Shown piece by piece: positions 12,003 to 61,480 of a stretch of DNA of 64,000 bases. How positions within the stretch are numbered: position 1 is the stretch's first letter; each line of letters starts with the position of its first letter. The notes beneath the pieces are model-generated. The model had not been told where the DNA came from, ran no database searches, and saw only the letters and a program-made list of their open reading frames with translations. The stretch covers positions 1-64,000 of the IMG/VR virus record IMGVR_UViG_3300024239_000015; one strand, 5' to 3'. The translations under genes and the position numbers were made by a program.

Positions 12003-12060
12003 AGCTTGTACCTTCTTTTATTTATCCAGCCTTCGCGATTGATTGGGGCTAGTCCTAACA

Positions 12061-12073
12061 ATAATGTATATCT
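12061..12073 (-). promoter_or_regulatory. Putative early promoter motif AGATATAnATTAT
   Basis: 23-bp block gtcctaacaataatgtatatctg (12052-12074) is identical to 61472-61494. Confidence 0.6.
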
Positions 12074-16540: not shown

Positions 16541-16804
16541 TTATACCTCCAGGTTTTTAAATTGCGCCAGTTGGTGGTCTGGGTCATACCGTTCTATAGG
16601 CAACTCAAACCGTTTTGCTGACGCTTCATCTCGATACAGCCAGTTAGCTATCGTAGCAATAGTTGCACTGTGTAGTGCAATTACACGACTGACTTTACGA
16701 GGCGTACCGTGGTCTAATACCCCTTTGTGAGGCGCTAGTTTCCTAAGCGCTTCAAATTGCTCCCTGTCTAATGCGACAAGGGCATTTAATGCATCACCGT
16801 CAAA
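16541..16804 (-). CDS. beta'-N exon 3 (87 aa, not in the ORF track)
   Basis: TTT GAC GGT GAT GCA = FDGDA... open to TAA at 16541; preceded by the intron terminal G at 16805. Confidence 0.9.
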   Translation of the reverse strand, partial: FDGDALNALVALDREQFEALRKLAPHKGVLDHGTPRKVSRVIALHSATIATIANWLYRDEASAKRFELPIERYDPDHQLAQFKNLEV

Positions 16805-19800: not shown

Positions 19801-20097
19801 AGACTCGATTGGACGCTCGAGAATACTCATGGGAACGGTACCACACAGCTCACAGCGCAGTTTAATGCTTGCTGCATACTGCCCTGTGGTATGCCCACAC
19901 CCACACGACGGGAGGACGCTGACTTGGTCTCCATCGTACTCTGTCCGTATTAAATTGGACAGAAATTGTTTTGCTTGCACGGTACGTGCGTCGATGTCAT
20001 TGATACACACCGGTGGCACGGACTGTGCGCCGTACATTTCCACGTAATCGACGAGTTCTAGATAGACGCCATCGTCGTTTTCGTTTGTTTCTACCAC
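16541..20097 (-). CDS. Non-virion RNA polymerase beta'-like subunit, N-terminal part (phiKZ gp55-like), three exons: 20097-18895, 18472-18359, 16804-16541; 526 aa when spliced
   Basis: Zn finger C.CG..C..C; KKGWFRKHIFGTR; spliced junctions read IFHRN|PTLH and GMNCD|FDGDALN, restoring the NADFDGD-type active-site motif. Confidence 0.92.
16805..18358 (-). mobile_element. Group I intron 2 of beta'-N, carrying an HNH endonuclease in the P1 loop
   Basis: 5' site GAT| (U) pairs with IGS GTCCCA; P4 GCTG/CAGC; P3 CACCAC/GTGGTG; R GTTCAACGAC (16993-17002); S GTATAGTC (16893-16900); ends in G. Confidence 0.9.
17319..18293 (-). CDS. Intron-encoded HNH homing endonuclease with NUMOD1-type DNA-binding repeats (I-HmuI-like)
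   Basis: HRLVAETF..VTNHIDGDKFNNRASNLEWV; C-terminal repeats such as FESYGEAARYFNVSTSSI; AAGGA RBS. Confidence 0.92.
   Translation of the reverse strand: MREGLIESKRYPKYYHHPQIPRIVISEEGIVIDVLLDYCPLAYFNSHFGYNVMNIRGKGTMTHHRLVAETFHHKEHDHYVTNHIDGDKFNNRASNLEWVDRKRNLWHAYELGLKKDNRPVEVLDLTTQEVNSFLGLNKAAAWLKASQSRLHVYLNSTQQTPFLKKYNVRYADSSWKQIDSSNVGEKPNGAPREVVLTSKDGKEVYIFESYGEAARYFNVSTSSIWQSINRGTRVRGLFLAKHLDEKEGSVGTVVKRKPKKMSPNSRRPAFPIKVTNKLTGEVKHYASTLDFCAEVGARRNTVQRGMSINGGRWSIYQIEYVNVS
18359..18472 (-). CDS. beta'-N exon 2 (114 nt, 38 aa, not in the ORF track)
   Basis: Translates PTLHELSMQQFFISRIKKDPAINSVSVSTHCITGMNCD, matching the beta' segment (R.)PTLH...N.D. Confidence 0.9.
18473..18894 (-). mobile_element. 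Group I intron 1 of beta'-N (422 nt, no ORF)
   Basis: 5' site GAAAT| pairs with GTTTC including the U-G wobble; R GTTCAACGAC (18700-18709); S AAGATATAGTC (18545-18555); ends AAAG before CCC ACA CTG. Confidence 0.9.
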
Positions 20098-20157
20098 AGT
20101 GACTCCCTGAGTGAATTGAAACGAATTTTAAAGAAAAGAAAAGGAAAAGCGGCAAAG

Positions 20158-20186
20158 AAAACAGGGAGCGGAGTGCTCCCTGTTTC
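20158..20186 (-). terminator. Terminator after chmA
   Basis: aaacagggagc-ggagt-gctccctgttt, with a T-rich tract downstream on the minus strand. Confidence 0.75.
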
Positions 20187-20206
20187 TTCGTCACGAGGAG
20201 TAAAGC

Positions 20207-22003
20207 TTACCAGCGAGACTGGAAGCTTTGACCGTTGTTAAACGTCGGTGCGTTGTAGCCAGTGCTGAATGCATTTGCAGACAGACCGCCAGACAACACG
20301 TCTACGTTTGCACGAGGTACGACGCGAGTTTCGTTTTGTGTGTACTCTGGAGTCAGAGCCGCACCTACTTCACCCAACGCAGTCACCAGGGCTAACAGAA
20401 CGCGATCGTTTAACATCACTTCAGTAGCGTAGTCAGTGATCACCACGTCACCTAAGTATTTCTTCTGCAGCTGACACAGTACAGTCAGACGTTCTTCGGT
20501 AGAGGCACGACGTGGATCGTAACACTCATCGAAACGGTAGACTTGGGTTAAGTCTTTGTCACCTTCCATAGCAGAGATTGCCATGTGGTCGAAGTCACGG
20601 ATGTCGGACTTCACAGAGTGGCCATTGGTGTAGTAACCTAACGGAACCCGTGTAGGGACGACTTTACCGATAGGACCAGAACCTAAGCGCTGGAACACTT
20701 CAGAGAACTTACCAGAGGTCAGGTTATCACACGCTTGTGTGAAACGCTTCACTGCCGTGTCAGAACCCGCACAGGCGTCACGTAACAGACTCAGTAACCA
20801 GGTGTCTTCACCTGTTTCTGGGATGTGTACTACGACCGCTACTTCTGGGTGAACGAATTCAGCGAAGAAGCGGTTTACGTCGAACGTAGGTTCGTTAGCA
20901 CCCACACGAGTACCTGCTGGCAGTAAACCTTCAGCGGCCATTTCAGCAGACAGCACGTCTAAGCTACGCTCAGCGCCATGGCGGTGGAACGTGTTGATGT
21001 ACTGACGGCTACGGATTGGTTCAGCAGCTAACGCTAATGCCAACACCATGTGCTCAGGCGTGGTCACACCGGCGTTCAGTGACAGATCGGTGACAACCAT
21101 ACGCGCTTGGAAGTGCTGAGTAGTAGCACGAGCTGGCTGGTATGGCGTTTCGATCATGCGTGGGCCTACGTAGACTAAGTCTAAGAAGGCAGACAGCTGA
21201 GCCATGTTACGAGATTGACCCGCTAACAAACCACCATTGGTGTTGGTGTTCACCAACGCAACAGAAGCAGTGATGTCACGACGTACGGGTAAACCACCTG
21301 CTGTTTTAGCAGGAGCTGACGCTAACTCTACACGGCTACGTAATTGGAAGCCTGCTTGGTTTGCACCTTTCATAGAAACGATGTACTGACCTGCTTCCTG
21401 TAACGCTGCTTTTAAGTTGTACTGTAAAGCAGACATTGCACGGACTAACACGTCGCGTACGGCTTTGGCATCGCCTGGAGCAGTTTCACGGGGTACTACA
21501 CTGAAGCCTACGAATGACGCCGTTGGCGGTAAACCTGCTAACGCTTTAGACACCAGTGGTTGGAACTGAGGATCACGTGTTAAGTCACCTACGGTTTGTG
21601 GGTACAGTAACTCACGTTGACCTAAGTTGATGCTGTCGTTGCGTTTGGCTAACATCGGCAGTTCTTCTGCAGTACCTGCTAATAACATCAGGTACACCGC
21701 AACTTGCTTTTTGTACTCACCCACGATCGCTACAGCTGACACTGGGATCAGAGTCGTTTGTTGATCCAGTTCCAGCATGGTGAACTTGAAGTTGTCACGG
21801 TTGGCAGAGTCTACCATTGGCTTCAGAGTTTCTAAGTAGCCAGACAGCACTTGACTGTGTGGGCTTAACGGCATCACACCGCTGGTTTGTGCTGCAAACA
21901 TAGCAGCTAAGTTTTGAGCGACTGGTTGTTCACCAGTGAACGTTTGTTGTTGTTCTGCTTGTGCCTGAGTCGACTTCTGGCTGGCAGTGTTCAGTTCTTT
22001 CAT
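20207..22003 (-). CDS. chmA: Chimallin, major nuclear shell protein (phiKZ gp54-like)
   Basis: 598 aa directly upstream of beta'-N; Q-rich flexible N-terminus; RVPLGYY..DIRDFDHMAI-type motifs; strong high-expression codon bias. Confidence 0.82.
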   Translation of the reverse strand: MKELNTASQKSTQAQAEQQQTFTGEQPVAQNLAAMFAAQTSGVMPLSPHSQVLSGYLETLKPMVDSANRDNFKFTMLELDQQTTLIPVSAVAIVGEYKKQVAVYLMLLAGTAEELPMLAKRNDSINLGQRELLYPQTVGDLTRDPQFQPLVSKALAGLPPTASFVGFSVVPRETAPGDAKAVRDVLVRAMSALQYNLKAALQEAGQYIVSMKGANQAGFQLRSRVELASAPAKTAGGLPVRRDITASVALVNTNTNGGLLAGQSRNMAQLSAFLDLVYVGPRMIETPYQPARATTQHFQARMVVTDLSLNAGVTTPEHMVLALALAAEPIRSRQYINTFHRHGAERSLDVLSAEMAAEGLLPAGTRVGANEPTFDVNRFFAEFVHPEVAVVVHIPETGEDTWLLSLLRDACAGSDTAVKRFTQACDNLTSGKFSEVFQRLGSGPIGKVVPTRVPLGYYTNGHSVKSDIRDFDHMAISAMEGDKDLTQVYRFDECYDPRRASTEERLTVLCQLQKKYLGDVVITDYATEVMLNDRVLLALVTALGEVGAALTPEYTQNETRVVPRANVDVLSGGLSANAFSTGYNAPTFNNGQSFQSRW

Positions 22004-22074
22004 GTATTTCTTCCTTTTGTTTTACGTACATTTCGATTGCAATCGAGCTAGGTTTTATCCTAGTGCTCAACTCT

Positions 22075-22087
22075 ATAATCTATATCT
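22075..22087 (-). promoter_or_regulatory. Putative early promoter motif upstream of chmA
   Basis: ctcaactctataatctatatctgtaaa is nearly identical to 53097-53123. Confidence 0.6.
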
Positions 22088-22221
22088 GTAAATTTTTCGA
22101 GTCGTCTACGGATATAGGAATTTGGGGGTTTAGCCGCATAGAGAGTGGCTGTGCAGGCACTTTTTACAAAGCCTGCTGTGTTTTCTACATAGTATAACTA
22201 CAGCAGTAAAAATAAACACTG

Positions 22222-23397
22222 ATGGTATGTGCGAAAACGTCTTCAAGACTCATGTTTACCAAGGAGCAGATTGTGCTGACTTTATTTTTGTCTCCGAGTG
22301 TAAAGGCTTACGGAGGCGTCCGTCTCGGACAGTATCCGTATATAGAAAGACGATTCAGTGAAAACTTTCGAACGGTAAGGGACCATTACCGGACGAGAAA
22401 CCTAGCGGTGAAGAACACACACTTCCTCGTGACTGCATTAGACTCTTTACCGATTGCAGATACAGGTTCACCACATCGCTTTGCAGACGTAGCTGCATCC
22501 TTAGCTCCCAACTTACTGAATCGGTTTGGAGTAGGAAGTGACCGTTACGTAGGAAAGTTTCAAGCCACCCAACGGTTCTTTGGAAGTAACGTCTACGAGT
22601 ACCTGTACTTAACACAAAGTTACTACGACGAGTTTACACTCAAACCGAGCGAGTGGATGTACTTACGTCCTATCCAAGTGCTGAGCCATCCTCGTACAGA
22701 TTTTGATTACTCTATCCTCGCAGGACAGATTACCACCGAAGAATCAGGGCACGCGTTTATTACCATTGACTTTGGTTTACTGGCATTCCAGTACCACTGT
22801 TGGCGTAAAGAACACTTGAGGAAAAACGGTGGAGTCTTTTTGGGGTCAGTACGACAGTTTCTAGTGCAATACCCATTAGCGAACTTAATCCCAAGTTACA
22901 ACAACATCGCATGGTACAACACGGTGTTTCGTAGTGCCATAGGGTACACGCCTGCGTTATCAGTCAATCGTCCGCCTCTCGCGATTCCTGACTCGTACAC
23001 CTACGTGAGGGAAACTGCAGCACAGTTTCACGCAAACTTAACGCGTACAGGACGAGCTTTGCAAGCAGAAGCGTTACTCCAGTGGATACCGAGTGTGGAC
23101 ATGTATGCAAGTAATGCAGCTGAGGACACCTACTGTTACCCTACAAGAGTGCACTCCACTCCCGCAGAAGTCGCGCGATGGTTTTGTCAACTCGATTGGT
23201 GTGAAACGGTTTTTGGAATTCTGTTTCAAAACGAAGCGATCAAGAACAACCGTGCGTTAGTGAACGAGTACTTAAAAGACTACCGTCGGTTAGTGAATAC
23301 AAAACTGTTACAGGACGTTGCGATGCCGTTAGATGCACGCGACTACTTAAACAGAAAGTTAGACACGATACTCGCGTACATAACGGAGGGAGCGTAG
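22222..23397 (+). CDS. Conserved jumbo-phage protein (phiKZ gp52-like position)
   Basis: 391-aa ORF divergent from chmA, as in phiKZ-like genomes. Confidence 0.6.
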   Translation: MVCAKTSSRLMFTKEQIVLTLFLSPSVKAYGGVRLGQYPYIERRFSENFRTVRDHYRTRNLAVKNTHFLVTALDSLPIADTGSPHRFADVAASLAPNLLNRFGVGSDRYVGKFQATQRFFGSNVYEYLYLTQSYYDEFTLKPSEWMYLRPIQVLSHPRTDFDYSILAGQITTEESGHAFITIDFGLLAFQYHCWRKEHLRKNGGVFLGSVRQFLVQYPLANLIPSYNNIAWYNTVFRSAIGYTPALSVNRPPLAIPDSYTYVRETAAQFHANLTRTGRALQAEALLQWIPSVDMYASNAAEDTYCYPTRVHSTPAEVARWFCQLDWCETVFGILFQNEAIKNNRALVNEYLKDYRRLVNTKLLQDVAMPLDARDYLNRKLDTILAYITEGA

Positions 23398-23459
23398 TGC
23401 TCCCTCCTTATGCTTGTCATTTTATGGACTGTTTAGAATTTAACCAAAAGGGTGTGTGT

Positions 23460-24692
23460 ATGTCAAAAAAATTAAACCGATTTTTAGCGCTGGAAAGTGC
23501 TGAGGTCGTAGAACAACGTTTGGTCGGTTCGGAAGAGCCTACGGTCGATGTAGAGACTGCAGCCGCAGAATTAGGTGAAGTAGAAGAAGCATTAGACGAA
23601 TCGTTAGACGTCCATGACGAACTGTCGGCTTTAGCAAACCAAGTACAGACTGACGCAGACAACGGTAAACTGTCTCAGGAAGCGTTAAGCTACGCGAACG
23701 CGTTGGCGCGTGTACATCTGAACCGCGTAGGTTTAGGCGGATTGCGCACCGGTATGGAGAGCACTTACTCTCCAGAGTCGATCGGTAAACGCGTGAAAGA
23801 CGTGTGGGAGATGGTGAAGAAGTTCTTCGCAGAGATGCTCAAGAAGTTGAAAGCTTTCTTCAGTAGTTCTAGCAAAAAGTCGGAAGAACTAAAAGAAGAG
23901 ATAAAGCAACAAAAAGTAAAACTTCAGGAACTAGATAAAGAGATCAAAGCCGCAAAAAGCGACAAGGCTGAATCCAAACAGATCCCTGTAAAGTTTACAA
24001 CAAAGAGCCGTGAGGTTCTCTTTCTGGTCGACTCTGATGGTAAACTACCTGATTTAAACAAAGCCATGTTGAGTTTAGATGAAGCTCTCGGTATCGTCAT
24101 GGATTCCTACTCGGAACGCTTAGACCAGTTCACGCGAGTGAGTAAAGACATCCAAGCGGCGACACAAGGAACGGCTGTTCCAGAATACACCAGCGCCGAT
24201 TTCAAGTTATCCTTAAAAGGTATGACCGTAGTGAAAGATGCTGTGAGTGGATACCCCACTCACAGATTAGATTTGGAGTACGGTAATGTAGCTTTGGGGT
24301 GTTATGAACCACTCGGTGATATCAGACCTTCGAACTTCGTAGAGAGGAGTCAATTCGCTCTGCTTCACGCGGAATCGGGCCTGGCGCACCAAGAGTGTAC
24401 TGTACCAATCCCCTCCATTTCTGAACTCGACTCCCTCTTAAATTCCGCCGAAAGACTATTGGCTGTATCTGAAACACTCGACCAGGCTATGGTAGGCTTC
24501 GCGCGAACTCTGGAGAATAAAGAATTTCCAGATGAAGTATGGGATGCCGCAGAAGATGCTGTTATGTTAGCGACTAAACTATCCAGTTCGGCTGCGTCCT
24601 ACGCTGTCTTTATACAAAAACAGAAAATCAGACTCTGTCGAGCGATTATCACTTACGTCGAGTTGGCTAAGGCTGAATTAGCTAAGTCGTAA
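23460..24692 (+). CDS. Probable internal head protein with prohead-protease-type propeptide
   Basis: Start MSKKLNRFLALES; acidic N-terminal region with A/S/G-x-E sites (ALE, SQE, GME), typical of phiKZ-type processed head proteins. Confidence 0.6.
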   Translation: MSKKLNRFLALESAEVVEQRLVGSEEPTVDVETAAAELGEVEEALDESLDVHDELSALANQVQTDADNGKLSQEALSYANALARVHLNRVGLGGLRTGMESTYSPESIGKRVKDVWEMVKKFFAEMLKKLKAFFSSSSKKSEELKEEIKQQKVKLQELDKEIKAAKSDKAESKQIPVKFTTKSREVLFLVDSDGKLPDLNKAMLSLDEALGIVMDSYSERLDQFTRVSKDIQAATQGTAVPEYTSADFKLSLKGMTVVKDAVSGYPTHRLDLEYGNVALGCYEPLGDIRPSNFVERSQFALLHAESGLAHQECTVPIPSISELDSLLNSAERLLAVSETLDQAMVGFARTLENKEFPDEVWDAAEDAVMLATKLSSSAASYAVFIQKQKIRLCRAIITYVELAKAELAKS

Positions 24693-24706
24693 GTAAACTC
24701 ACCAAA

Positions 24707-24739
24707 CATACGAGGGAGGCGTAAAGCCTCCCTCTATGC
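24707..24739. terminator. Convergent-junction hairpin flanked by CATA/TATGC
   Basis: cata-c-gagggaggc-gtaaa-gcctccctc-tatgc. Confidence 0.65.
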
Positions 24740-24744
24740 TGCTC

Positions 24745-27054
24745 CTACTCTTCGCTGTTCCAAACCACCATCGGAGTCATGTCACGTGACTCCCAACCTT
24801 CTATTACAGGAGGTGTGCCGTCTACCCCCCACGAAGGAGGGAAGTAGTCTGATACCATTTTCGTTAGATGTTTCTCGTGGGTGTAATACCCCAAGGACTC
24901 TAAGATCAAATAGTAACTGGTCATTAACCCATAGATCAATTTCCGGTAGTTCATCATCTCCAGTAACTCTTCTGGGATTCCGTGGACTTCAGCATAACTG
25001 ATGGGTAGGTAGATAGTCGTTAAATACTTTTTGTTGTATTTACGCATCCACTGACGGAATCGTTCGGCTAAGTCTTGGTCGGGCAGGGAATCCAACCACG
25101 TGTTGACTTTGTTCGGTGTATTAGTCAACATCGACATCTTAATCGCACGGTACGGAGGTTCGGTGATGACTCCGTATTTCGGTGCAAAGACCTCCTGCCA
25201 TAACGTGTAGTTCAAATACGGAGAGTTTTCGTTTTTGTACCCCTTCGCAGGTTTGATGGTTGCTGTGGAGAAAAACAACGAATCGCCGTTTCCAATCCCG
25301 TGTTTAATACGGTGTTCTTCGTCTGCGACTTGCTGCAGTATTGCGCGCAGCTCTATTTTCTTCCCACTGGAAATCGTCGTCAGTATCGTTTCAATGAGTT
25401 CATCCGACTTGTCCATTAAGTACGTAGGGGCTTTGGAGTTCCGTAACGTCGCTCCTTTGATCTCCAGTTCGTGTTTCTTAAAGACAATCCCTTCTTTTAC
25501 GGCTTGGCTTGCAAAGTAGTGTTTTGCCATACTGGTTAAAAAGAACACAGGGAAACTGTATTCATTTTTCATTGCCAGCATGTGGATTTTCTCTGTCACC
25601 ACACCCATGTTCGCTGACATCAACGCCAGTAGGTGTACGGTCAACTGAGAACACAAATAAGTGACCGCAGCACTCACGTTTGCGCTACGTTCACCAAACT
25701 CCAACTCCCCGACATACCACTCTGTCCAGTACTGGGTAGAGAAGATACTGGAGTCAGTATCTGACGCCACCACACACCTACGTATCGATTCAGGAAAGTG
25801 AGCCATACTCGCTGGCATGTTGGGTGTACGCCAAAACGCACGGATGAAGTCTGCGTAGTCCTGTACGGTTTCGTACAACTGCTTCGCTAACGCACCAATC
25901 CAACCGTAATGTGGTCCGTTCACAACGTCATCGTCCTTGAGTTTTTTCCCGTCGAGCTCGCGGTGTGCGATGATCACTAGCAGGATCTGAGCGTCTTCGT
26001 CTAACTTTTTAATCCACCCAGCCGTTTCTTCCGCTGGGATGTGTTGTGTAGGTTTCTCAGATAAACCACCAAGTAGACGTCGTACAAACTCAGGATGTAA
26101 CTCCGCTAAGCTGTACATACACCCCGTATAGACATACGCGGCTCTTTCGATGTCCGATAACGCTTCTACCAACAACCGCAGCTTCTCTTCGAGTTCTGGA
26201 CTTCTCCAGTACAACCGCGTGGAACGTAACACGTGTTCAAACGTGTACTCTACACTTGGATACCCAAGTTTATATTTTTGCATCGCAGCGCGTATAGCGT
26301 CGTAGTCGGAGTGGTTGACAATACTGACGATATTCTGCTGTGCGATTTCATAGCTCCAGTAGTGACGGTTTCCTAACAGAAAACGCTCTACGTTCGCGTT
26401 TGTATTGGAAGACGCGCTACGACACGTACTGGTGAGTGTACTGTGAGCTGAGACCAAACACAATACAGACGACTTCGTACCATGCGCACCTGAGACTGAG
26501 TTACACTTGATCTTGTTTCGGTTCTGTCGGTTGTTGTAGATGTTCTGCATCAGTGTGTTCCCCGCACGTTTCGCGTCAAACATCAACCCTTTGTTTTTGT
26601 TTCGGTTAGCAAGCTCGCCTACTAAGTAACGTCCGGTTAGAGACTCTTTGACTTTTGGGTTCGCGTACACCGTTAAGTTAGGAGCAATCGCAGACCCTAA
26701 ACGTACTGCTTTTTTGAGAATCTCTGTTAAAGGGACTAATTTCTGTTCACGATCCCCGTCAACCTCACGTTCCAGTATCTTTACCTTCGGGTCTACAAAA
26801 GGAAACTTTCCTGTATTCCCAGGTTTGGTGTTCGCTACTACCCATTTTAAAACTTCTTCGAAGGGTTTCCCTGTACGCAAGCTGATGTACTTCGCAACGT
26901 CACGTGCGTACGTTTTATAAAAATCTAACGAGCGCTTATACTCTTCAGGCGCTAGAACAAATGGATTGGACATCGTAAACGTCTCTTGTAATTTCAGTGC
27001 ACTAAACGATAGACCGTAAAGGTCAAAAAAGACAGACGGCATAAAAGGAAGCAT
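24745..27054 (-). CDS. Family B DNA polymerase, polymerase domain (phiKZ gp50-like)
   Basis: KIKCNSVSG (KxxxNS.YG-like) and VASDTDSS (DTDS) motifs; likely true start MSNPFV at 26973. Confidence 0.9.
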   Translation of the reverse strand: MLPFMPSVFFDLYGLSFSALKLQETFTMSNPFVLAPEEYKRSLDFYKTYARDVAKYISLRTGKPFEEVLKWVVANTKPGNTGKFPFVDPKVKILEREVDGDREQKLVPLTEILKKAVRLGSAIAPNLTVYANPKVKESLTGRYLVGELANRNKNKGLMFDAKRAGNTLMQNIYNNRQNRNKIKCNSVSGAHGTKSSVLCLVSAHSTLTSTCRSASSNTNANVERFLLGNRHYWSYEIAQQNIVSIVNHSDYDAIRAAMQKYKLGYPSVEYTFEHVLRSTRLYWRSPELEEKLRLLVEALSDIERAAYVYTGCMYSLAELHPEFVRRLLGGLSEKPTQHIPAEETAGWIKKLDEDAQILLVIIAHRELDGKKLKDDDVVNGPHYGWIGALAKQLYETVQDYADFIRAFWRTPNMPASMAHFPESIRRCVVASDTDSSIFSTQYWTEWYVGELEFGERSANVSAAVTYLCSQLTVHLLALMSANMGVVTEKIHMLAMKNEYSFPVFFLTSMAKHYFASQAVKEGIVFKKHELEIKGATLRNSKAPTYLMDKSDELIETILTTISSGKKIELRAILQQVADEEHRIKHGIGNGDSLFFSTATIKPAKGYKNENSPYLNYTLWQEVFAPKYGVITEPPYRAIKMSMLTNTPNKVNTWLDSLPDQDLAERFRQWMRKYNKKYLTTIYLPISYAEVHGIPEELLEMMNYRKLIYGLMTSYYLILESLGYYTHEKHLTKMVSDYFPPSWGVDGTPPVIEGWESRDMTPMVVWNSEE

Positions 27055-27069
27055 CCGCTTCCCTAGTCT

Positions 27070-27100
27070 AAAAAAAAGAGGGGGTCAGCAAACCCCCTTT
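27070..27100 (-). terminator. Intrinsic terminator
   Basis: Stem agggggt/accccct, followed by T8 on the minus strand. Confidence 0.7.
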
Positions 27101-27219
27101 GTCTCTAAGGCATTGGGGAAAGCCAAAGACGAGGTTCAGGTACATGTCGTATTCCACCGCCGAAAGGACACCCAGCGTGGTCTACATACCATAGTCGTCA
27201 ATGTCAAAAAAAAAACGTG

Positions 27220-27248
27220 AAAAAAGAGAGGAGCGTATAGCTCCTCTC
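27220..27248 (-). terminator. Intrinsic terminator
   Basis: gagaggagc-gtata-gctcctctc, followed by T6 on the minus strand. Confidence 0.75.
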
Positions 27249-27417
27249 GTGGTGGTTTATCAAACCCAATTTTCATGAAGGAAGAATTGCGTAAAACTAA
27301 ACAACGAGCTGTAGACTCCCCAGGAGGCGAGGATGACCTCCGAAGTGGAACCGGTTTAGAGACTACACGAAAAGTACGGACTCTAAAACTTCTCACCTCA
27401 GAGGTAACTACATAGTA

Positions 27418-27843
27418 TTACGACTGTATTTTAAAAGACGTAATGGTAAACCCATTACTCTGTAACGCTTCTTCTACCAATGGACGTTTCAGTGGATCGA
27501 CGCCATCGAGTTCAATCACAAACTTTGTTGTCGTGTGGACTTCGATACTCGATTCCACCAGCCACGGTAAGCCAATGAATCGTGTACTGCCATCCATCGT
27601 TTTGATCTTCAACCACTCGTAGTCATACGGACTGTTTGGTTTTGGATCTGGTAAGAAAGGTAGGATGTTCGCATGCAGTGCAGCAACGTCCGTTCCTGCC
27701 TGTGCGGCTGTTTCGGTATCGGCAATCGACAATGCTTTTGCTCGAATAATCGGTGGGATTACACTCGGCGCGCACGTCGTCGCTGAGATGGTATTACGCA
27801 GTTGGAAATAGTCTTGCCAAGCCATACAGGGCTCCTCTTTCAA
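27418..27843 (-). CDS. Conserved hypothetical protein upstream of DNA polymerase (gp49-like position)
   Basis: 141-aa ORF; DYEWLKIKTMDGSTRFIGLPWL beta-rich core. Confidence 0.7.
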   Translation of the reverse strand: MKEEPCMAWQDYFQLRNTISATTCAPSVIPPIIRAKALSIADTETAAQAGTDVAALHANILPFLPDPKPNSPYDYEWLKIKTMDGSTRFIGLPWLVESSIEVHTTTKFVIELDGVDPLKRPLVEEALQSNGFTITSFKIQS

Positions 27844-28145
27844 AATTCAATAGCGACGGTGTCGTCTTCCCATAACATCACCCGATACGGCGGATTGCCT
27901 AACCGATACACCCGCAGTACTTTCTCTAATAAACACTTCCCAGTCAAGTACACGTCTCTGAGTATACCGTAGGGATCAGTGAACACCCCTAAAGCAATCT
28001 CCGTTAAGAGTTGTGAAAACGACAGGTTTAATGCAACGTGTGAGCGTGGGTCATCGACGTACTCCGAGTACGTGAGCATGGCCGCACAAAGAAAGTCATT
28101 GTACTCAGACTCCACCTCACGTAGATCGACTATAAGCACACCCAT
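27840..28145 (-). CDS. Small protein, paralog-array member
   Basis: 101 aa; VLIVDL ... EDDTVAIEF; 4-nt overlap with the next gene. Confidence 0.7.
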   Translation of the reverse strand: MGVLIVDLREVESEYNDFLCAAMLTYSEYVDDPRSHVALNLSFSQLLTEIALGVFTDPYGILRDVYLTGKCLLEKVLRVYRLGNPPYRVMLWEDDTVAIEF

Positions 28146-28524
28146 GGTATTCCCTTTTGATCATTTCGCCAAACAACACAAAATCAGACACGCCGTCTAA
28201 ACGGATGTCCCGCCACTGCACTCCCGCATCGAAGATTCCATACCGAGCAAAGAGATCTCCTACGCGACGGACACAGTCTCGCATGACCTCTGCTTTTAAC
28301 GGGTCCATCCCCACGTGTTCTTTGATCCAATAGCCTCGATGTGCATTGACCGCACACAACGCTGCTTCCACCAGTACGTCTTCGACTCTTACGTCAAACC
28401 ACCCCAACGAGAGGAGGTCGTCGTAAAGTCGTTCGTACTCGCCCTCCACGGGGATATACGTCACAGTCGCGTTGGTGTACGCTTTGACCGTTTCCCCGAC
28501 TTCATTGGTTTTGTACAGACTCAT
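28117..28524 (-). CDS. Small protein, paralog-array member
   Basis: 135 aa; VTYIPV ... DGVSDFVLFG. Confidence 0.7.
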   Translation of the reverse strand: MSLYKTNEVGETVKAYTNATVTYIPVEGEYERLYDDLLSLGWFDVRVEDVLVEAALCAVNAHRGYWIKEHVGMDPLKAEVMRDCVRRVGDLFARYGIFDAGVQWRDIRLDGVSDFVLFGEMIKREYHGCAYSRST

Positions 28525-28530
28525 GGTTGA

Positions 28531-28932
28531 CTATGCCTCATTCACTGGATAAAACACCACATAAAGATCACCTGCGACTTCATGAACCTCTGCTGGAGTG
28601 TAGTCGTACATATCTACGACGTTCATACTAAAGAAGTGCCTCAGTTCCGGCTCTAGTATCTGAGCCATTTGCATGATCTTGTTCCAAATTTCACTTTGTA
28701 CTTTCTCCATTTCTACACCTGGATGGTCCCGACAGTAGAGTTCCGTCTGTTGGTAGATGTGCTCCCACAGCTGATCGCGAGTCCCCATGTGCACCGCGTG
28801 ATGGTTATCCGGGTGCATGTAGTACTGGATCACCAAGAACAACATATCACTGTCGTTAAACACAGGGTTTCTTCCTAGTTGCAGTACGTGCTCTAAAAGA
28901 TGAGACGTACCGAATATAAACATCTTTTTCAT
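28531..28932 (-). CDS. Small protein, paralog-array member
   Basis: 133 aa; MFIFGT ... AGDLYVVFYP. Confidence 0.7.
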   Translation of the reverse strand: MKKMFIFGTSHLLEHVLQLGRNPVFNDSDMLFLVIQYYMHPDNHHAVHMGTRDQLWEHIYQQTELYCRDHPGVEMEKVQSEIWNKIMQMAQILEPELRHFFSMNVVDMYDYTPAEVHEVAGDLYVVFYPVNEA

Positions 28933-28989
28933 AGCGGGTGGGATTCCTTTTTTCTAAACCAAAGCAAGAGGAGCATAGCGTCGGAGTAC

Positions 28990-29391
28990 TTAGACTCCGA
29001 CGGGTTGGTGTGTACCAAACGTCACGTAAAGCTCACTGGTGGGTTTTCCATATGAGCTTCCTACGTGTTCTACGCCCCAAGGTTTTTGTAAGTAGGGTTT
29101 TAAGTAAAGAGAGAAGATCGGATCTTTACGGAGGATCTCGATCTCTATAGCGATTGCTGTTTCTTCACTTAACCGATAAAGACTTTCTTGGTCGAGGGTG
29201 TGCTGTTGACTCAAGTAATGATCCAACACACTGCTGTATAACTCTCCTGGTACTTCGTAGGGAGCTTCGACAAAAAGCTCCCATCCACGAACCACCATGT
29301 CCCAATACAGCCCTGTTCCTAAGTACCGTCCAAACGGTGCGCGTAAGTCTTCAAAAGGAACCACCACTACGTATTTCTCCGTGGGGGTCAT
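28990..29391 (-). CDS. Small protein, paralog-array member
   Basis: 133 aa; YVVVVPF ... SELYVTFG. Confidence 0.7.
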   Translation of the reverse strand: MTPTEKYVVVVPFEDLRAPFGRYLGTGLYWDMVVRGWELFVEAPYEVPGELYSSVLDHYLSQQHTLDQESLYRLSEETAIAIEIEILRKDPIFSLYLKPYLQKPWGVEHVGSSYGKPTSELYVTFGTHQPVGV

Positions 29392-29834
29392 AAGTCCTCC
29401 GGTAAGACTGGGGTTTCAGTATCCACAGTAACGGTTGTACAGGAGTACTCCAGTTCACGAAACCCTACCGCTAACCACTCGTCGTTGAGTAAACGGTAGT
29501 CGTGCAGTAGATAGTTGGGTGTGTACTGGATGTGATCGGCAATTAAACAGATCAACGTGTTGATCGCTTGGTTGTGATACTCTTGCAGCAACTGCCACTC
29601 TTTAAAGTTTGCAGCACAACGGTGATACACTCGTGCAAGCTCTACGTCAATGTAGTCTTGTTTGGAGCGTTGAGCAAACACCACTTCCAGTAGACTGCGT
29701 AAGACGTCTTCTCTGTCTTTGATCCAGAACGGTTCTCCGCCTAGAAGAGTTTTAACGTTCTGTGCTAGTGTGGTGTGTACTCCCGCAACGTAAAGCACGT
29801 GACCACTGTACTCAGGGGACACGGGATGCATCAC
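29388..29834 (-). CDS. Small protein, paralog-array member
   Basis: 148 aa; HVLYVAG ... NDEWLAVGF. Confidence 0.7.
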   Translation of the reverse strand: MMHPVSPEYSGHVLYVAGVHTTLAQNVKTLLGGEPFWIKDREDVLRSLLEVVFAQRSKQDYIDVELARVYHRCAANFKEWQLLQEYHNQAINTLICLIADHIQYTPNYLLHDYRLLNDEWLAVGFRELEYSCTTVTVDTETPVLPEDL

Positions 29835-30679
29835 GCCACCCCAAGGACACGTTTAAGGACCGCGGAGAGTTCTTCCAGCGCGTAGGTGGTTTCTACTGCT
29901 TGAGAGATCAGTTTTGCTTGTGCTCCGCCTACGTACGTAAAGAGCACGGTGTCGTTGACCAATACGTCAAACTTAGCCTCGTTCTCACCTTGAGCCAACT
30001 GAACTTTAAATGACTCTTTTCCTTCGGTGGGTTCTGCTAGGAAACCACTGTAACTACTGTGTGCCACGTAAAACGATTCATTGCTCTGCAGTAAGTCCAT
30101 GACTTGTCTTACGGACAGAATACGTTCTTTCGGAGCAATTGGTTTGAGTACTGTCTCTACCTCATGTTTGAAAAGCCGTAGTTGTAAATCGGTCGTAACC
30201 TGCTCTTTCGTTCGTTTGGCTTGCTGTAATTCCCACTCGATGATTCGTGCGTCTCCTAAGTACTGAATGTACAGACTAGAACCATCGCAGTGCACCGACC
30301 ACACGGAGTGAGGAGCGACTTTAAGCGCACGAGAGAGTTCATCCAGTAACTGGTCTTTCAAAGGAACCAGTAGACGATCGTACACACGTGTCGAGTACTC
30401 GTGGTTATCGATCCCATCGAAGATAAACGCAGGGTGTAAGTCATGGACTGCTAACAACCACGCTTCTTCTAACCGTACGTAATCCCCCACGCAACTCGCA
30501 TCGTCCAGTATAAACCGTACGGTGTGTTCTACGATACGATCTGCAACGTCCCCTGTAGGTGTGGCGTCCCAACGAAACTCTGGAAAGAGCGCCTGGTGGA
30601 TCACTTGGATGTGTGACCACACGTCAAACATATACGTTTTTTTCTGTGCAGATTTATCGGGTATGCTTAACTGATTCAT
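29831..30679 (-). CDS. Two-domain protein, paralog-array member with a C-terminal extension
   Basis: 282 aa; TYMFDVW ... DGSSLYIQY, then about 130 extra residues. Confidence 0.7.
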   Translation of the reverse strand: MNQLSIPDKSAQKKTYMFDVWSHIQVIHQALFPEFRWDATPTGDVADRIVEHTVRFILDDASCVGDYVRLEEAWLLAVHDLHPAFIFDGIDNHEYSTRVYDRLLVPLKDQLLDELSRALKVAPHSVWSVHCDGSSLYIQYLGDARIIEWELQQAKRTKEQVTTDLQLRLFKHEVETVLKPIAPKERILSVRQVMDLLQSNESFYVAHSSYSGFLAEPTEGKESFKVQLAQGENEAKFDVLVNDTVLFTYVGGAQAKLISQAVETTYALEELSAVLKRVLGVA

Positions 30680-30697
30680 GTCTAGTGGGTTTCCTTT

Positions 30698-31162
30698 TTA
30701 GTCTTCTAACCGATACCATACGACGGTACGAGATTCAAACGACATCTCGTCATAGATCTCAACCACTAACATCCCATCGGGGCTAGTGATGAGCGACGCG
30801 ATGCTTTCGAAGTAATCCTGATACTCTTGCGCTCTTGGATAGATCGCATCAAGGATATCGGAGATCACTGCATTAAACGCTTCGTCGTCTTCTATTTGTC
30901 CTTCCAACGACCTGTACAGGGAATTATGCAATAAACTGTACCACGTTCCTCGCTTGTGTTCCACGAACGATTCCACCAACACGCTATACACCATGTAGTG
31001 ACTTGCATCCAAGCGTTCTAACAACTCCTCAGTACGTGGTCCTAAGAAATTCTCTGGAATCTCTTCTATATAAGCAGGATGTCCATCCTTTAGAATGGTG
31101 GCTAGTTCTTCTTTTGTTTTAAACATTTCATTTCCTCCAGCATACAGCAACGTTCCCGTCAA
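30698..31162 (-). CDS. Small acidic protein, probable paralog-array member
   Basis: Likely start MFKTKEE after a GGAGG RBS; ends SRTVVWYRLED. Confidence 0.65.
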   Translation of the reverse strand: MTGTLLYAGGNEMFKTKEELATILKDGHPAYIEEIPENFLGPRTEELLERLDASHYMVYSVLVESFVEHKRGTWYSLLHNSLYRSLEGQIEDDEAFNAVISDILDAIYPRAQEYQDYFESIASLITSPDGMLVVEIYDEMSFESRTVVWYRLED

Positions 31163-31538
31163 AGGTATCGTAGAAACTCACGTCAGGTACGTGGTGGTGT
31201 TCATACGCCATGGTTGAGACAGGGTGTAACTCACGGTACACGTCAACGAACACCAGCTCCAAAAGTTCCATCCGTAAAGTAGAGCACTGTACGAGTTCGT
31301 GGTATACGTGACGTTCTCCTGCGAGAGAACGGATGTGTAAGTACTCATCTGCAATCTGGTCGATTGCGCCTAGCCAAATCCCACGCACGATAGCCTCTAG
31401 TCCTCGAAAGAAAGGATGTTCTAACCAGATGGGGTGTTGTCCTTGCTGTGTGTGTACAATCTGTTGGATGCGGTGGTGCATCCGAGTGTACGCTGGAAGT
31501 AAGTCTACTATAAAGGTAGCACGCAAACGTTCGTCCAC
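31128..31538 (-). CDS. Small protein, first gene of the paralog array
   Basis: 136 aa; TFIVDLL ... DGNVAVCWRK; promoter motif at 31584-31596. Confidence 0.7.
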   Translation of the reverse strand: MDERLRATFIVDLLPAYTRMHHRIQQIVHTQQGQHPIWLEHPFFRGLEAIVRGIWLGAIDQIADEYLHIRSLAGERHVYHELVQCSTLRMELLELVFVDVYRELHPVSTMAYEHHHVPDVSFYDTFDGNVAVCWRK

Positions 31539-31583
31539 TGAGACCTCTTCTATTTATTACGAAAGATGGTTAATGTCATTGAA

Positions 31584-31596
31584 ATAATATATATCT
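31584..31596 (-). promoter_or_regulatory. Putative early promoter motif upstream of the paralog array
   Basis: ataatatatatct equals AGATATATATTAT on the minus strand. Confidence 0.55.
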
Positions 31597-31651
31597 CAAC
31601 GACGTTCCACATGTGATATGCGTTTATCGTAAATATAAACGCTTTAGAGCG

Positions 31652-31681
31652 GCATACTAGGGTAGGTCTACCCTACCCTAG
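31652..31681 (-). terminator. Hairpin after phuZ, followed by TATGC
   Basis: ctagggtagg..cctaccctag, then TATGC on the minus strand. Confidence 0.6.
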
Positions 31682-31689
31682 CTGGTCGA

Positions 31690-32709
31690 CTACAAAATCA
31701 AACCTGAGCCCGTAGAATCGCTCTCACCACCTAAGGCGGACGTCTCTGGCAGACTGGCTTGTTGTTGTTGGATGGCAGTTAAACGCTCTTTAGCGATGGA
31801 GTACAGTTTCTCCACACCTACAGTCGTGATCACTAACTGTAGTTGTTTCAGGTCGTCGTCGTTTCCTGCTGGAGCTAATAACCCATCGCAGATGTACCCA
31901 GCAGCGACCGGTGGGTAGTAGTCTGGGTTACTGGACAAACTGAATAAACTGATTGGGAACTCCACGTCTTTGAGTTCGTCGTCGTTTAGACAGTAGTCAA
32001 TTAAAGCCAGTTGAGGTTTGACCTGAGTCACACGGTTGTAGAACACCCAGTTGATCACGTCCGAACTATCTACACGAGAGTTCTCACCAGAGACCGCACG
32101 AGAAATATACGACACTAAACGTCGTGCTTCTGAGTCGGCTTCTGTTGCAGTATAACCATCATTCAGTGGATCAGTCAGCACATAGAACATCGACATCGGT
32201 ACGTTACGTCCCCGTGCCATTTTGTCTAACGACTCGATGACCTTGACGTTGTTCTGTGCGCTCAGCGCAGATTCTGCTGAACCGATAAAGATCGCCACCA
32301 CAGGGATACCTAACTCTAACAAACGAGCCTGCAGTAACGATGCAGCGACGTTTCCACTTCCGCCTGTCGTAGAGGCCAGTACGATATTAAAATCGCCCGG
32401 TGCGTGTTTCTGAAGGATTTGTGGGATGTGCTTCTCAATATCAGAAGCCAACTGACCACGGACTTTACCTGCACCATCTTTCTTATCACCCAGTGGAACG
32501 ATATACACCGACTCCGTAGGAATAGCGTCGGTTAAGTTCGCTTTGGAGGTGTCGATATACGCGATTTCTAATTCCGCGTGTCCTGGGACTTGCTGCTCTA
32601 CCGCACTTTGAAAGTACGCTGCGTTGTTGATCCCCGCGCCACCACAGCCATAAATACGTAATGTTTTCTTCATTCTAGTTTCCTTCTTCAGTGTAAACCT
32701 ATGAGCCAA
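31690..32709 (-). CDS. phuZ: Phage tubulin PhuZ
   Basis: GCGGAGIN, IDTS, DGAGKVR, TTGGSG and DSSDVIN tubulin/FtsZ motifs; likely start MKKTLRIYG. Confidence 0.93.
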   Translation of the reverse strand: MAHRFTLKKETRMKKTLRIYGCGGAGINNAAYFQSAVEQQVPGHAELEIAYIDTSKANLTDAIPTESVYIVPLGDKKDGAGKVRGQLASDIEKHIPQILQKHAPGDFNIVLASTTGGSGNVAASLLQARLLELGIPVVAIFIGSAESALSAQNNVKVIESLDKMARGRNVPMSMFYVLTDPLNDGYTATEADSEARRLVSYISRAVSGENSRVDSSDVINWVFYNRVTQVKPQLALIDYCLNDDELKDVEFPISLFSLSSNPDYYPPVAAGYICDGLLAPAGNDDDLKQLQLVITTVGVEKLYSIAKERLTAIQQQQASLPETSALGGESDSTGSGLIL

Positions 32710-32757
32710 AAGACGAGCTGTCTACATAAGACTAGAGCCGTCGTTAGTTTTTAACCG

Positions 32758-33639
32758 ATGGAGTTCCTGATGAACGCAATTCAGTATTTACTCAACCGAA
32801 TCAAACAGGAGATTCCTCCTCAGATTATCGAACGGGTGTTCGCTCCACAAGTGATCCGTTCTGTACGTCAAGCTGCGCCTGCTTATGGATTCCAATTTGC
32901 AAATAGCATCGATGCGCAATTAATAGACAAGGTCATCGAAGGGCGTTTGCGTCCTGACTTAGACTACGCAGGCGGTACGTCTGTGGATATCTCCTTAGAC
33001 GGTTTAGCTCACCAAGAGCTGGATTCTCCATTTGCATACGAAGGACGCTTTAACGTCATCTATCAAATTCCAAAGAGTAGAACCAATGGTTTAGAGATCA
33101 CCGCTGTGCATGCGTTTATCTACGGGATTAACTCACAGGTAGGGAGCACGTCGTACTCGGGTGGGCAATGGCCTTACACCACAGCGAACTCCACGATCAT
33201 CCAGCAAGGGATGCAAGGGATGCTGAACGCAGTGTCGCCTATTCCTATCTCTCAGTCTGCTAACACTACGATCATTGGTCCAAACACCATTCTGATCACC
33301 GACTGGACTCCTTTAGTCAGAAATGGATACATGTCTGTGCTTTTAGGGTACGACAGTCAATTTGCGACTATTCCTTCGAAGTACTACCACGCGCTTTCTA
33401 AGTTAGCGATCCTCGCCACCAAAGCGTGGATCTACAACAACTACTTATTAGAGATGGGCGAGCAAGAGTTGTTCTACGGGATGACGTTAGATCGTTTCAC
33501 CAGTATCATCGAACGGTACGAAGACGCGAATGACCTGTACGCAGAGTACTTAGCAACACAGTGGAAAGCGATGGCGCTCTTAGCCGATCCAAAGTCGGCA
33601 ATGAAACACTACCGGATGTTAATCGCCGGTGGACAATAA
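32758..33639 (+). CDS. Conserved probable virion structural protein
   Basis: 293-aa ORF divergent from phuZ; MNAIQYLLNRIKQEIP..I start typical of phiKZ-like structural genes. Confidence 0.55.
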   Translation: MEFLMNAIQYLLNRIKQEIPPQIIERVFAPQVIRSVRQAAPAYGFQFANSIDAQLIDKVIEGRLRPDLDYAGGTSVDISLDGLAHQELDSPFAYEGRFNVIYQIPKSRTNGLEITAVHAFIYGINSQVGSTSYSGGQWPYTTANSTIIQQGMQGMLNAVSPIPISQSANTTIIGPNTILITDWTPLVRNGYMSVLLGYDSQFATIPSKYYHALSKLAILATKAWIYNNYLLEMGEQELFYGMTLDRFTSIIERYEDANDLYAEYLATQWKAMALLADPKSAMKHYRMLIAGGQ

Positions 33640-53073: not shown

Positions 53074-53105
53074 TCCTTTGAATTGCGGGGCAAATTCTCA
53101 ACTCT

Positions 53106-61438: not shown

Positions 61439-61480
61439 TCTTTCACGTGTCCTTATTGTTGGTGTGGTTAGGTCCTAACA

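What the first reader, a model, noticed from the sequence alone, without database searches (positions are those of the whole stretch)
27840..31538. Array of eight highly diverged small paralogs between phuZ and DNA polymerase
Seen in sequence: eight consecutive, mostly overlapping genes of 101-154 aa (one has an extra domain) share a layout. Each has an N-terminal hydrophobic strand (VLIVDL, VTYIPV, MFIFGT, YVVVVPF, HVLYVA, TYMFDV, TFIVDL), a helical middle and a terminal hairpin (DDTVAIEF, SDFVLFG, GDLYVVF, SELYVTF, DEWLAVGF, SSLYIQY, RTVVWY, GNVAVCW). One early-type promoter drives the array. As I recall, phiKZ genes at this position (gp47/gp48) were identified as nuclear import factors. Inference: an expanded family of adaptors, each licensing different cargo for import through PicA, or a diversified set of host-protein binders.
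Basis: partly seen in the sequence, partly recalled or inferred. Interest (0 to 1): 0.78.

Follow-up and report, generated by a model that had tools for sequence, protein, structure and literature searches.

The report
Conserved early operon of small nucleus-phage proteins
Between the tubulin and DNA polymerase genes of a new nucleus-forming jumbo phage lies a conserved, early-transcribed operon of eight small fast-evolving genes, at least two (probably three) of which have one fold known only from these phages, in the genome position where phage phiKZ keeps two of its nuclear-import adaptors.

Summary
The eight genes are real. Each has a one-to-one positional orthologue in the two nearest relatives, and g3 and the C-terminal part of g2, checked against a close relative, are under purifying selection. 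A conserved early-type promoter precedes them and terminators follow the next gene, a phiKZ gp49 homologue.

"Eight paralogs" is only partly borne out. BLASTP, phmmer and hhalign find no similarity among them, except a moderate end-to-end match between g5 and g6 (56% probability). AlphaFold2 could be run on two only. Both models match almost only small proteins of phiKZ-like jumbo phages, several per phage, lying in the same array. Nothing convincing turned up in PDB or AlphaFold DB.

g3 is the orthologue of phiKZ gp43. No gene is a sequence homologue of Imp2 (gp47) or Imp4 (gp48). Imp2 homologues appear only as weak structural hits to g5.

The window also encodes homologues of Imp1/PicA, Imp3 and Imp6.

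The import-adaptor reading is plausible and testable, but rests on position and weak fold similarity. g1, g2, g4, g7 and g8 remain unmodelled.

The parts
31657..31681 (-). Strong hairpin (11-bp stem) just after the PhuZ stop, followed by a conserved GTATGCCGCTC block. Possibly a terminator or RNA-end element.
   Evidence: RNA fold -29.6 kcal/mol, z -4.4. Nearly invariant in W, L006 and L007.
31583..31596 (-). Early-type promoter-like motif AGATATATATTATT, 45 bp upstream of g1.
   Evidence: Conserved in L006 and L007. Five copies in the window against 0.74 expected, all 32-71 bp upstream of minus-strand genes, including chimallin. Matches the KATATTATY / TACATTATY early-promoter consensus tabulated for OBP, N1M2, EL, 201phi2-1 and phiKZ in PMC7058600.
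31128..31538 (-). g1, 136 aa, GTG start with AGAGG ribosome-binding site. Found only in this clade.
   Evidence: Orthologues L006_1 and L007_1 (phmmer 5e-6 and 2e-3; jackhmmer). No Pfam or PHROG hit.
30698..31126 (-). g2, probably 142 aa from ATG 31126 (the ORF extends to TTG 31162). Very acidic, pI 4.4.
   Evidence: Orthologues at 4e-21 and 4e-18. C-terminal 104 aa identical with 10 synonymous changes in L005. Start and ribosome-binding site; pI.
29831..30679 (-). g3, 282 aa, orthologue of phiKZ gp43 / PhiPA3 gp039 / Eowyn gp075. N-domain 1-177 (strand, helices, hairpin, long helix; family signature GD[YA]RIxEW) plus a clade-specific C-domain at about 224-278.
   Evidence: jackhmmer found 48 hits across phiKZ-like jumbo-phage loci. 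hhalign against the gp43 family gives 96.7%. AlphaFold2 pLDDT 69, N-domain blocks mostly 73-91. BFVD top hit is PhiPA3 gp039. dN/dS 0.16.
29388..29831 (-). g4, 147 aa. Clade-specific, with a possible distant counterpart at position 4 of L008, L009 and L011.
   Evidence: Orthologues at 7e-13 and 2e-10. hhalign F030-F044 73% over 60 columns. ESM Atlas model poor.
28990..29391 (-). g5, 133 aa. Confidently modelled beta-alpha3-beta-beta fold.
   Evidence: 19 family representatives found among 1.84e9 proteins. AlphaFold2 pLDDT 90, pTM 0.84. BFVD hits are nearly all small proteins of phiKZ-like jumbo phages. No convincing PDB, AlphaFold DB or Atlas match.
28531..28932 (-). g6, 133 aa. Probable tandem paralogue of g5.
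   Evidence: hhalign of the deep g5 profile against the deep g6 profile gives 56.5%, E 1e-4, 123 columns end to end; reversed control 0.1%. Transitive phmmer link.
28117..28524 (-). g7, 135 aa, clade-specific.
   Evidence: Orthologues at 3e-29 and 2e-24. ESM Atlas model poor, pLDDT 0.39.
27840..28145 (-). g8, 101 aa, clade-specific, the smallest member.
   Evidence: Orthologues at 2e-14 and 5e-12. ESM Atlas model pLDDT 0.74; the one match with TM about 0.5 on both sides is a 99-aa, mostly viral cluster (TM 0.50/0.51).
27418..27843 (-). g9, phiKZ gp49 homologue (SH3DP domain). Last gene of the operon; it does not belong with the eight.
   Evidence: Pfam PF20287 3.6e-22. phmmer against phiKZ gp49 1.5e-10. 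Present in 67 fetched loci.
27226..27248 (-). Intrinsic-terminator-like hairpin with a T run downstream of g9. A second one lies at 27079-27098.

Best explanation
The region is one early operon: promoter-like motif at 31583-31596, then g1 to g8, then the gp49 homologue, then terminators near 27240 and 27090. It is the counterpart, in a new nucleus-forming jumbo phage, of phiKZ genes gp43 to gp49.

The eight products are small, acidic, soluble proteins. Each is kept as a separate gene in fixed order, but their sequences diverge about twice as fast as neighbouring core genes.

At least the g3 N-domain and g5, and probably g6, adopt one fold: an N-terminal strand that presumably pairs with a C-terminal hairpin (strand pairing was not examined), with a helical bundle between them. 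This fold is otherwise seen only in small proteins of phiKZ-like jumbo phages, from the same array wherever the gene could be identified (PhiPA3, Psa21, 201phi2-1, Eowyn).

Inferred, not shown: these are protein-binding adaptor or accessory factors of the phage-nucleus system. The most likely role is cargo-specific licensing factors working with the Imp1/PicA homologue (8945-10441), as Imp2 and Imp4 do in phiKZ. In that reading, rapid sequence change reflects co-evolution with cargo and Imp1 surfaces.
For: Genes are real and ordered: 1:1 orthologues in L006 and L007 and purifying selection on g3 and the C-terminal part of g2.

Fast evolution: 22-32% identity, against 50% for the gp49 homologue and 66-69% for the DNA polymerase.

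Early promoter: conserved motif shared with the chimallin gene. Terminators follow g9.

Shared layout of the two AlphaFold2 models.

BFVD hits to both models come almost only from phiKZ-like jumbo phages. Several come from the same phage. Their names or lengths match array genes: PhiPA3 039 and 044; Psa21 129, 305, 165 and 183 aa; 201phi2-1 153 and 276 aa; Eowyn 123, 147 and 153 aa (against 9, 78, 79, 80).

Imp2 homologues (PhiPA3 gp044, Psa21 gp042, 201phi2-1 gp79) are among the g5 hits.

Same genome position as imp2/imp4.

Core import genes are present in the window.

In phiKZ Tn-seq, orf43, orf47, orf48 and orf49 have no filtered insertions (PMC12676376).

All eight are acidic, like Imp2 and Imp4.
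Against: No sequence or profile similarity to Imp2 or Imp4.

The Imp2 structural hits have low TM-scores (0.27-0.38) and probabilities of 0.14-0.80.

Only two of the eight were modelled, and there was no direct model-to-model superposition.

The g3 N-domain has one more helix than g5, and only five BFVD targets appear in both hit lists, mostly weakly.

Function of the gp43 family is unknown.

Position is weak evidence, because the interval holds 4-15 unrelated-looking small genes in different clades.

phiKZ gp44 to gp46 in the same array tolerate insertions.

Acidic small proteins are common in phages.
Confidence: 0.4

Rival explanations
1. A hotspot of unrelated, lineage-specific early accessory genes (host takeover or counter-defence). 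These would be small acidic proteins that happen to be alpha/beta, without common origin and with no role in import.
For: No detectable similarity among seven of the eight families. Families are clade-specific, and gene number varies from 4 to 15 between clades. Divergence is fast. The promoter is early-type. phiKZ gp44 to gp46 are dispensable in the laboratory.
Against: Strict 1:1 order conservation across W, L006 and L007 despite 22-32% identity. The two modelled members share a topology. Both models hit proteins of the same arrays in other phages. phiKZ gp43, gp47 and gp48 lack insertions, and Imp2 and Imp4 are import factors.
Confidence: 0.3
2. Replication-compartment or replisome accessory factors that work with the gp49-like SH3DP protein and the divergent DNA polymerase encoded just downstream.
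For: Same operon as the SH3DP gene, whose Pfam family is defined by association with phage DNA polymerases. The PhuZ-array-gp49-polymerase synteny holds in 48 loci. The gp43 family is conserved throughout the family and has no filtered insertions in phiKZ.
Against: Two terminator-like hairpins (27226-27248 and 27079-27098) lie in the 363-bp gap between g9 and the polymerase gene, which has no copy of the early motif. Most members are far less conserved than replication proteins. No nucleic-acid-binding or enzymatic fold was found.
Confidence: 0.2
3. Some of the ORFs are not genes, and the shared 'layout' is a reading artefact.
For: No database family hits. The crude propensity predictor was noisy.
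Against: Every ORF has orthologues of similar length in two relatives. Purifying selection. Ribosome-binding sites. Confident AlphaFold2 model for g5.
Confidence: 0.02

Closest known systems
phiKZ gp43 family (PhiPA3 gp039, 201phi2-1 gp75, Eowyn gp075); function unknown
   Same: g3 is a member. Profile-profile probability is 96.7% and jackhmmer finds 48 hits. It has the GD[YA]RIxEW signature after the hairpin. It sits in the same position, and the top structural hit is PhiPA3 gp039.
   Different: The C-terminal part differs between clades: 282 aa here, 357 aa in phiKZ, and only 128-135 aa (N-domain alone) in L008 and L009.
phiKZ Imp2 (gp47) and Imp4 (gp48), cargo-specific nuclear import adaptors (bioRxiv 10.1101/2024.03.27.586873)
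   Same: Same array between PhuZ and gp49. Small acidic proteins. Restricted to one clade by sequence. Imp2 homologues show up as weak structural matches to the g5 model. The partner Imp1/PicA is present in the window.
   Different: No sequence or profile homology to any of g1 to g8. An Imp4 homologue occurs in L009 and L011 directly after PhuZ but is absent here. Function was not tested.
PhuZ to DNA-polymerase small-gene arrays of other phiKZ-like jumbo phages (Eowyn gp074-084, Psa21 gp037-047, PhiPA3 gp038-045)
   Same: Same synteny and gene sizes. Several members per array match the g3 or g5 models.
   Different: Gene families are almost entirely different at sequence level, and gene number ranges from 4 to 15.

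Membership tests
phiKZ gp43 family (for g3) | Significant sequence or profile similarity to gp43 homologues | tested here: met
   hhalign of the gp43 family against the g3 N-domain family: 96.7%, E 3.8e-10, 139 columns. jackhmmer recovers phiKZ gp43 at 2e-13.
phiKZ gp43 family (for g3) | Conserved motif GDYRIxEW after the beta-hairpin, and a position inside the PhuZ-gp49 array | tested here: met
   g3 has GDARIIEW. D143 and R145 are invariant in 29 sequences. Position.
Imp2 (phiKZ gp47) family | Sequence or profile similarity to gp47 and its homologues | tested here: not met
   phmmer found nothing. hhalign of a 4-member Imp2 profile against G1 to G8: all below 3%.
Imp2 (phiKZ gp47) family | Shared three-dimensional fold | tested here: inconclusive
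   The g5 model hits PhiPA3 gp044 (probability 0.80, TM 0.33/0.27), Psa21 gp042 (0.44) and 201phi2-1 gp79 (0.14).
Imp2 (phiKZ gp47) family | Required for import of a specific cargo and itself imported via Imp1 | not testable with these tools
   Needs genetics and microscopy in a cultivable phage.
Imp4 (phiKZ gp48) family | Sequence similarity to gp48 | tested here: not met
   gp48 links to L011_1 (6e-4), which in turn links to L009_1; these are the genes directly after PhuZ in those relatives. There is no counterpart in the window.
One paralogous family comprising all eight genes | Detectable sequence or profile similarity between members | tested here: not met
   Best BLASTP E-value 0.17. hhalign 2% or less among the eight shallow profiles. 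The deep g3 N-domain, g5 and g6 profiles against the other families give 5% or less. The only exception is g5/g6 at 56.5%, E 1e-4.
One paralogous family comprising all eight genes | Common predicted fold | tested here: inconclusive
   Same strand-helices-hairpin topology in the g3 N-domain and g5, with partly overlapping BFVD hits. g1, g2, g4, g6, g7 and g8 were not modelled with AlphaFold2. ESM Atlas models of g4 and g7 were too poor to use.
Early operon of phiKZ-like jumbo phages | Early-promoter consensus upstream, recurrent before other early genes | tested here: met
   AGATATAYATTATY: 5 copies against 0.74 expected, one upstream of chimallin. Conserved in L006 and L007. Consensus taken from PMC7058600.
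SH3DP (Pfam PF20287; flanking gene g9) | Pfam score above the gathering threshold | tested here: met
   78.7 bits against a cutoff of 25.

The most novel reading that the evidence does not exclude
A single ancient fold specific to nucleus-forming jumbo phages (N-terminal strand, helical bundle, C-terminal hairpin), shared by gp43, Imp2 and many other small proteins, has radiated to fill the PhuZ-to-polymerase array of these phages. In this reading it supplies the clade-specific cargo adaptors of the Imp1/PicA import system, a phage analogue of a karyopherin-adaptor family, and g1 to g8 are this phage's set.
Probability: 0.2. Interest if true: 0.8.

Novelty: new variant of a known kind. Interest (0 to 1): 0.55.

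Why it matters
[quoted passage not shown] There the cargo-specific adaptors (Imp2, Imp4, Imp5, Imp7) have no recognisable homologues outside Pseudomonas phages, so how other nucleus-forming phages license cargo is open.

If the small proteins of the PhuZ-polymerase array share one fold with Imp2 and gp43, adaptor candidates could be named in any such phage from structure and position alone. The evolution of import specificity would then become testable.

Even without that, the work has three concrete results:
- It defines a conserved early operon.
- It assigns g3 to the gp43 family, which has no filtered transposon insertions in phiKZ Tn-seq.
- It yields a confident model of a fold with no solved relative.

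Tried and rejected
- Near-identity DNA search against phage records: no match.
- Pfam and PHROGs on g1 to g8: nothing significant.
- The search for homologous proteins on g3: only itself and one 88%-identical fragment.
- PhuZ as a single-protein query in IMG/VR: only the window's own contigs.
- IMG/VR loci fetched with a polymerase profile: all at or below 44% polymerase identity. Useful for the gp43 family, not for the clade-specific genes.
- hhalign all-against-all of 54 array families from 48 loci: very few cross-family links. The first attempts timed out.
- ESM Atlas look-ups of g7, g8 and g4: feature scores in the noise range, and two poor models.
- A home-made Chou-Fasman profile: too noisy, since it missed the g5 hairpin, so it was not used as evidence.
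- TATATTTAC as a promoter candidate: not enriched. The motif after the hairpin: not enriched.
- Literature searches for phiKZ gp43 to gp46 functions: nothing beyond the Tn-seq tables.
- Rfam scan of 16000-33000: no hits.
Full report
**Source and setting.** The window is part of an IMG/VR contig of 233 kb. It comes from an undescribed nucleus-forming jumbo phage. Its PhuZ tubulin (31690-32709, minus strand) is at most 36% identical to any PhuZ in GenBank phage records. It encodes chimallin, plus homologues of phiKZ gp42, gp52, Imp3 (gp59), gp66, Imp6 (gp67), gp68, Imp1/PicA (gp69) and gp70. On the minus strand the order is PhuZ, eight ORFs (g1 to g8, 31538 down to 27840), a gp49 homologue carrying the Pfam SH3DP domain (27418-27843), then the divergent family-B DNA polymerase (24745-27054). 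This matches the synteny of phiKZ gp39 to gp50 and Eowyn gp073 to gp086.

**Are the eight ORFs genes?** Yes. Contigs carrying polymerases 69% and 66% identical to ours (L006, L007) have exactly eight genes of similar size in the same interval. Each window protein finds its positional counterpart there and no other (phmmer E from 5e-6 to 3e-29).

- Against a closer relative (L005, 88% identical in g3), g3 has dN/dS 0.16.
- The C-terminal 104 residues of g2 are unchanged there, despite 10 synonymous differences.
- Start-codon context and the orthologues indicate that g2 begins at ATG 31126 (142 aa) and g4 at ATG 29831.
- All eight are acidic, with pI 4.4-6.0.
- They evolve fast: 22-32% identity to the L006 and L007 orthologues, against 50% for the gp49 homologue and 66-69% for the polymerase.
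- The order is nevertheless fixed. These are old, individually maintained genes, not a recent expansion.

**Transcription.** The 151-bp spacer between PhuZ and g1 is far better conserved among the three phages than the proteins are, at 74% column identity. It contains three elements.

- A strong hairpin at 31657-31681 (z -4.4).
- A conserved GTATGCCGCTC block.
- The block AGATATA(T/C)ATTAT.

The last block fits the early-promoter consensus tabulated for OBP, N1M2, EL, 201phi2-1 and phiKZ (KATATTATY, TACATTATY, TATATTAC; PMC7058600). With up to two mismatches the motif occurs five times in the window against 0.74 expected. All copies are on the minus strand, 32-71 bp upstream of a gene start, and one precedes chimallin. 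Terminator-like hairpins lie only downstream of the gp49 homologue (27226-27248 and 27079-27098). So g1 to g8 and the gp49 homologue look like one early operon. It is not supported by expression data.

**Are they paralogues?** Sequence methods say no for most.

- All-against-all BLASTP gives a best E-value of 0.17.
- phmmer on 100 array proteins from nine phages finds no within-genome link.
- hhalign among the eight orthologue profiles gives 2% or less.
- A 29-sequence profile of the g3 N-domain finds none of the others.
- I extracted the PhuZ-to-gp49 interval from 48 loci of phiKZ-like jumbo phages. It holds 4-15 small ORFs everywhere. Clustering gave 191 families, and I compared the 54 with at least three members by hhalign. 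Cross-family links are rare.

The one relevant exception is g5 against g6. After deepening both profiles, they align end to end over 123 columns, strand to strand and hairpin to hairpin, at 56.5% probability and E 1e-4. A reversed control gives 0.1%. I read this as a probable tandem duplication.

**Structure.** Only two AlphaFold2 jobs were allowed.

- g3, with 29 homologues: pLDDT 69 overall, with N-domain blocks mostly 73-91. Elements are strand 15-19, helices 21-31, 43-62, 68-90 and 93-118, hairpin 125-132/135-143, and a long helix 144-177. A poorly defined linker follows, then a small C-domain at 224-278.
- g5, with 23 homologues: pLDDT 90, pTM 0.84. Elements are strand 7-13, helices 21-42, 44-61 and 68-96, and hairpin 105-114/119-127.

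The two share the order strand, helical bundle, hairpin, though g3 has one more helix. I could not superpose the two models directly.

**What the models match.** Foldseek against BFVD gave, for both models, hit lists made almost wholly of small proteins from phiKZ-like jumbo phages.

- For g3: PhiPA3 gp039, Psa21 (305 and 129 aa), PhiEaH1, Goslar, Eowyn (123 and 153 aa), Noxifer and SL2.
- For g5: PhiEaH1 W8CZW1 (TM 0.63/0.60, E 1e-4), Aphrodite1, Desertfox, PhiPA3 gp044, Aeromonas D3, Special G, pEt-SU, Psa21 (165 and 183 aa), Eowyn (147 aa), RAY, Noxifer and 201phi2-1 (153 and 276 aa).

Where I could check, the names or lengths match genes inside the PhuZ-polymerase array of those phages: PhiPA3 039 and 044; Psa21 gp038, gp039, gp040 and gp042; 201phi2-1 gp78 and gp79; Eowyn gp076, gp081 and gp084. 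The length matches are suggestive, not proof. Five targets occur in both lists.

**Relation to known proteins.** g3 is the orthologue of phiKZ gp43, PhiPA3 gp039, 201phi2-1 gp75 and Eowyn gp075. Support is hhalign 96.7%, 48 jackhmmer hits, and the signature GD[YA]RIxEW right after the hairpin.

None of g1 to g8 is a sequence homologue of Imp2 or Imp4. An Imp4 homologue sits directly after PhuZ in relatives L009 and L011 but is absent here.

Three Imp2 homologues, confirmed by tblastn, appear among the g5 structural hits. They do so with low TM-scores and mixed probabilities: PhiPA3 gp044 at 0.80 (TM 0.33/0.27), Psa21 gp042 at 0.44, and 201phi2-1 gp79 at 0.14. This is a lead, not a membership.

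In the phiKZ transposon screen, orf43, orf47, orf48 and orf49 have no filtered insertions. orf44, orf45 and orf46 tolerate them (Table S2 of PMC12676376). The phiKZ array is therefore a mix of important and dispensable genes.

**Interpretation.**

- Shown: a conserved early-type operon of eight real, fast-evolving small genes; g3 is a gp43 orthologue; the g3 N-domain and g5 share a topology; that fold recurs in the same array of other phiKZ-like jumbo phages; g5 and g6 are probably related; the core import genes are present.
- Inferred: that these proteins are protein-binding adaptors of the nuclear import system. The grounds are position, the weak fold link to Imp2, rapid divergence with fixed order, and the fact that known cargo adaptors are clade-restricted, so this phage must have its own if it needs any.
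- Rivals: unrelated early accessory or counter-defence genes, or replication accessory factors tied to the gp49-like protein and the polymerase. Neither is excluded.
- My estimate is about 0.4 for the adaptor reading. I put about 0.2 on the stronger claim that one fold family fills the array and supplies the adaptors across all nucleus-forming jumbo phages.

**Verdict.** The word "paralogs" is not established for most members. The functional interpretation is plausible but untested. To my knowledge, and within the searched library, the recurrence of this fold in the array has not been described. It deserves a full structure-prediction survey.

Noticed in passing
window 16544-20088 (minus strand): The RNA polymerase beta'-like gene next to chimallin is in three pieces. 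The uninterrupted 525-aa L007 protein aligns to 20088-18895 (aa 2-399), 18520-18359 (aa 384-437) and 16828-16544 (aa 430-525). The 1.5-kb gap carries an HNH + NUMOD1 endonuclease ORF (17319-18293). It looks like two intervening sequences, one holding a homing endonuclease, as reported for RNA polymerase genes of phiKZ and PhiPA3. Rfam found no intron model at gathering score.
   Followed up: partly
window 12060-12073, 22074-22087, 31583-31596, 53105-53118, 61480-61493 (all minus strand): Recurrent motif AGATATAYATTATY, with 5 copies against 0.74 expected. Each lies 32-71 bp upstream of a minus-strand gene, including chimallin and the gp68 homologue. Probably this phage's early promoter.
   Followed up: partly
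window 31539-31689; L006 5176-5335; L007 5145-5296: The PhuZ-g1 spacer is much more conserved (74% column identity) than the flanking array proteins (22-32% aa identity). It holds an 11-bp-stem hairpin followed by GTATGCCGCTC. Hairpins followed by a TATGC-like block also sit in the g5-g6 gap of all three phages. This could be a terminator plus a middle or late (TATG-type) promoter; not tested.
   Followed up: partly
window 8945-10441, 12142-12921, 15932-16540 (minus strand): Homologues of phiKZ Imp1/PicA (E 5e-40), Imp6 (4e-25) and Imp3 (6e-10). The core nuclear import set is encoded about 12-20 kb from the array.
   Followed up: yes
L009 5583-6002; L011 4905-5342: In two relatives the gene directly after PhuZ is a homologue of phiKZ Imp4 (gp48; direct phmmer link via L011_1, 6e-4) and carries a weak Pfam hit to nucleoside 2-deoxyribosyltransferase-like (PF15891). 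The window has no such gene.
   Followed up: no
L010 6207-6977 and 6980-7393; L064/L065 positions 3 and 4: Elsewhere in these phages, adjacent array genes are detectably related. L010_5 resembles the gp43-like L010_4 family (hhalign 42%; phmmer 2e-4 to g3). L064.3 and L064.4 families align at 81%. Tandem duplication does therefore occur in this array.
   Followed up: partly
window 27055-27417: The 363-bp gap between the gp49 homologue and the DNA polymerase holds two terminator-like hairpins and only an implausible 86-aa ORF. No early-promoter motif precedes the polymerase gene.
   Followed up: no
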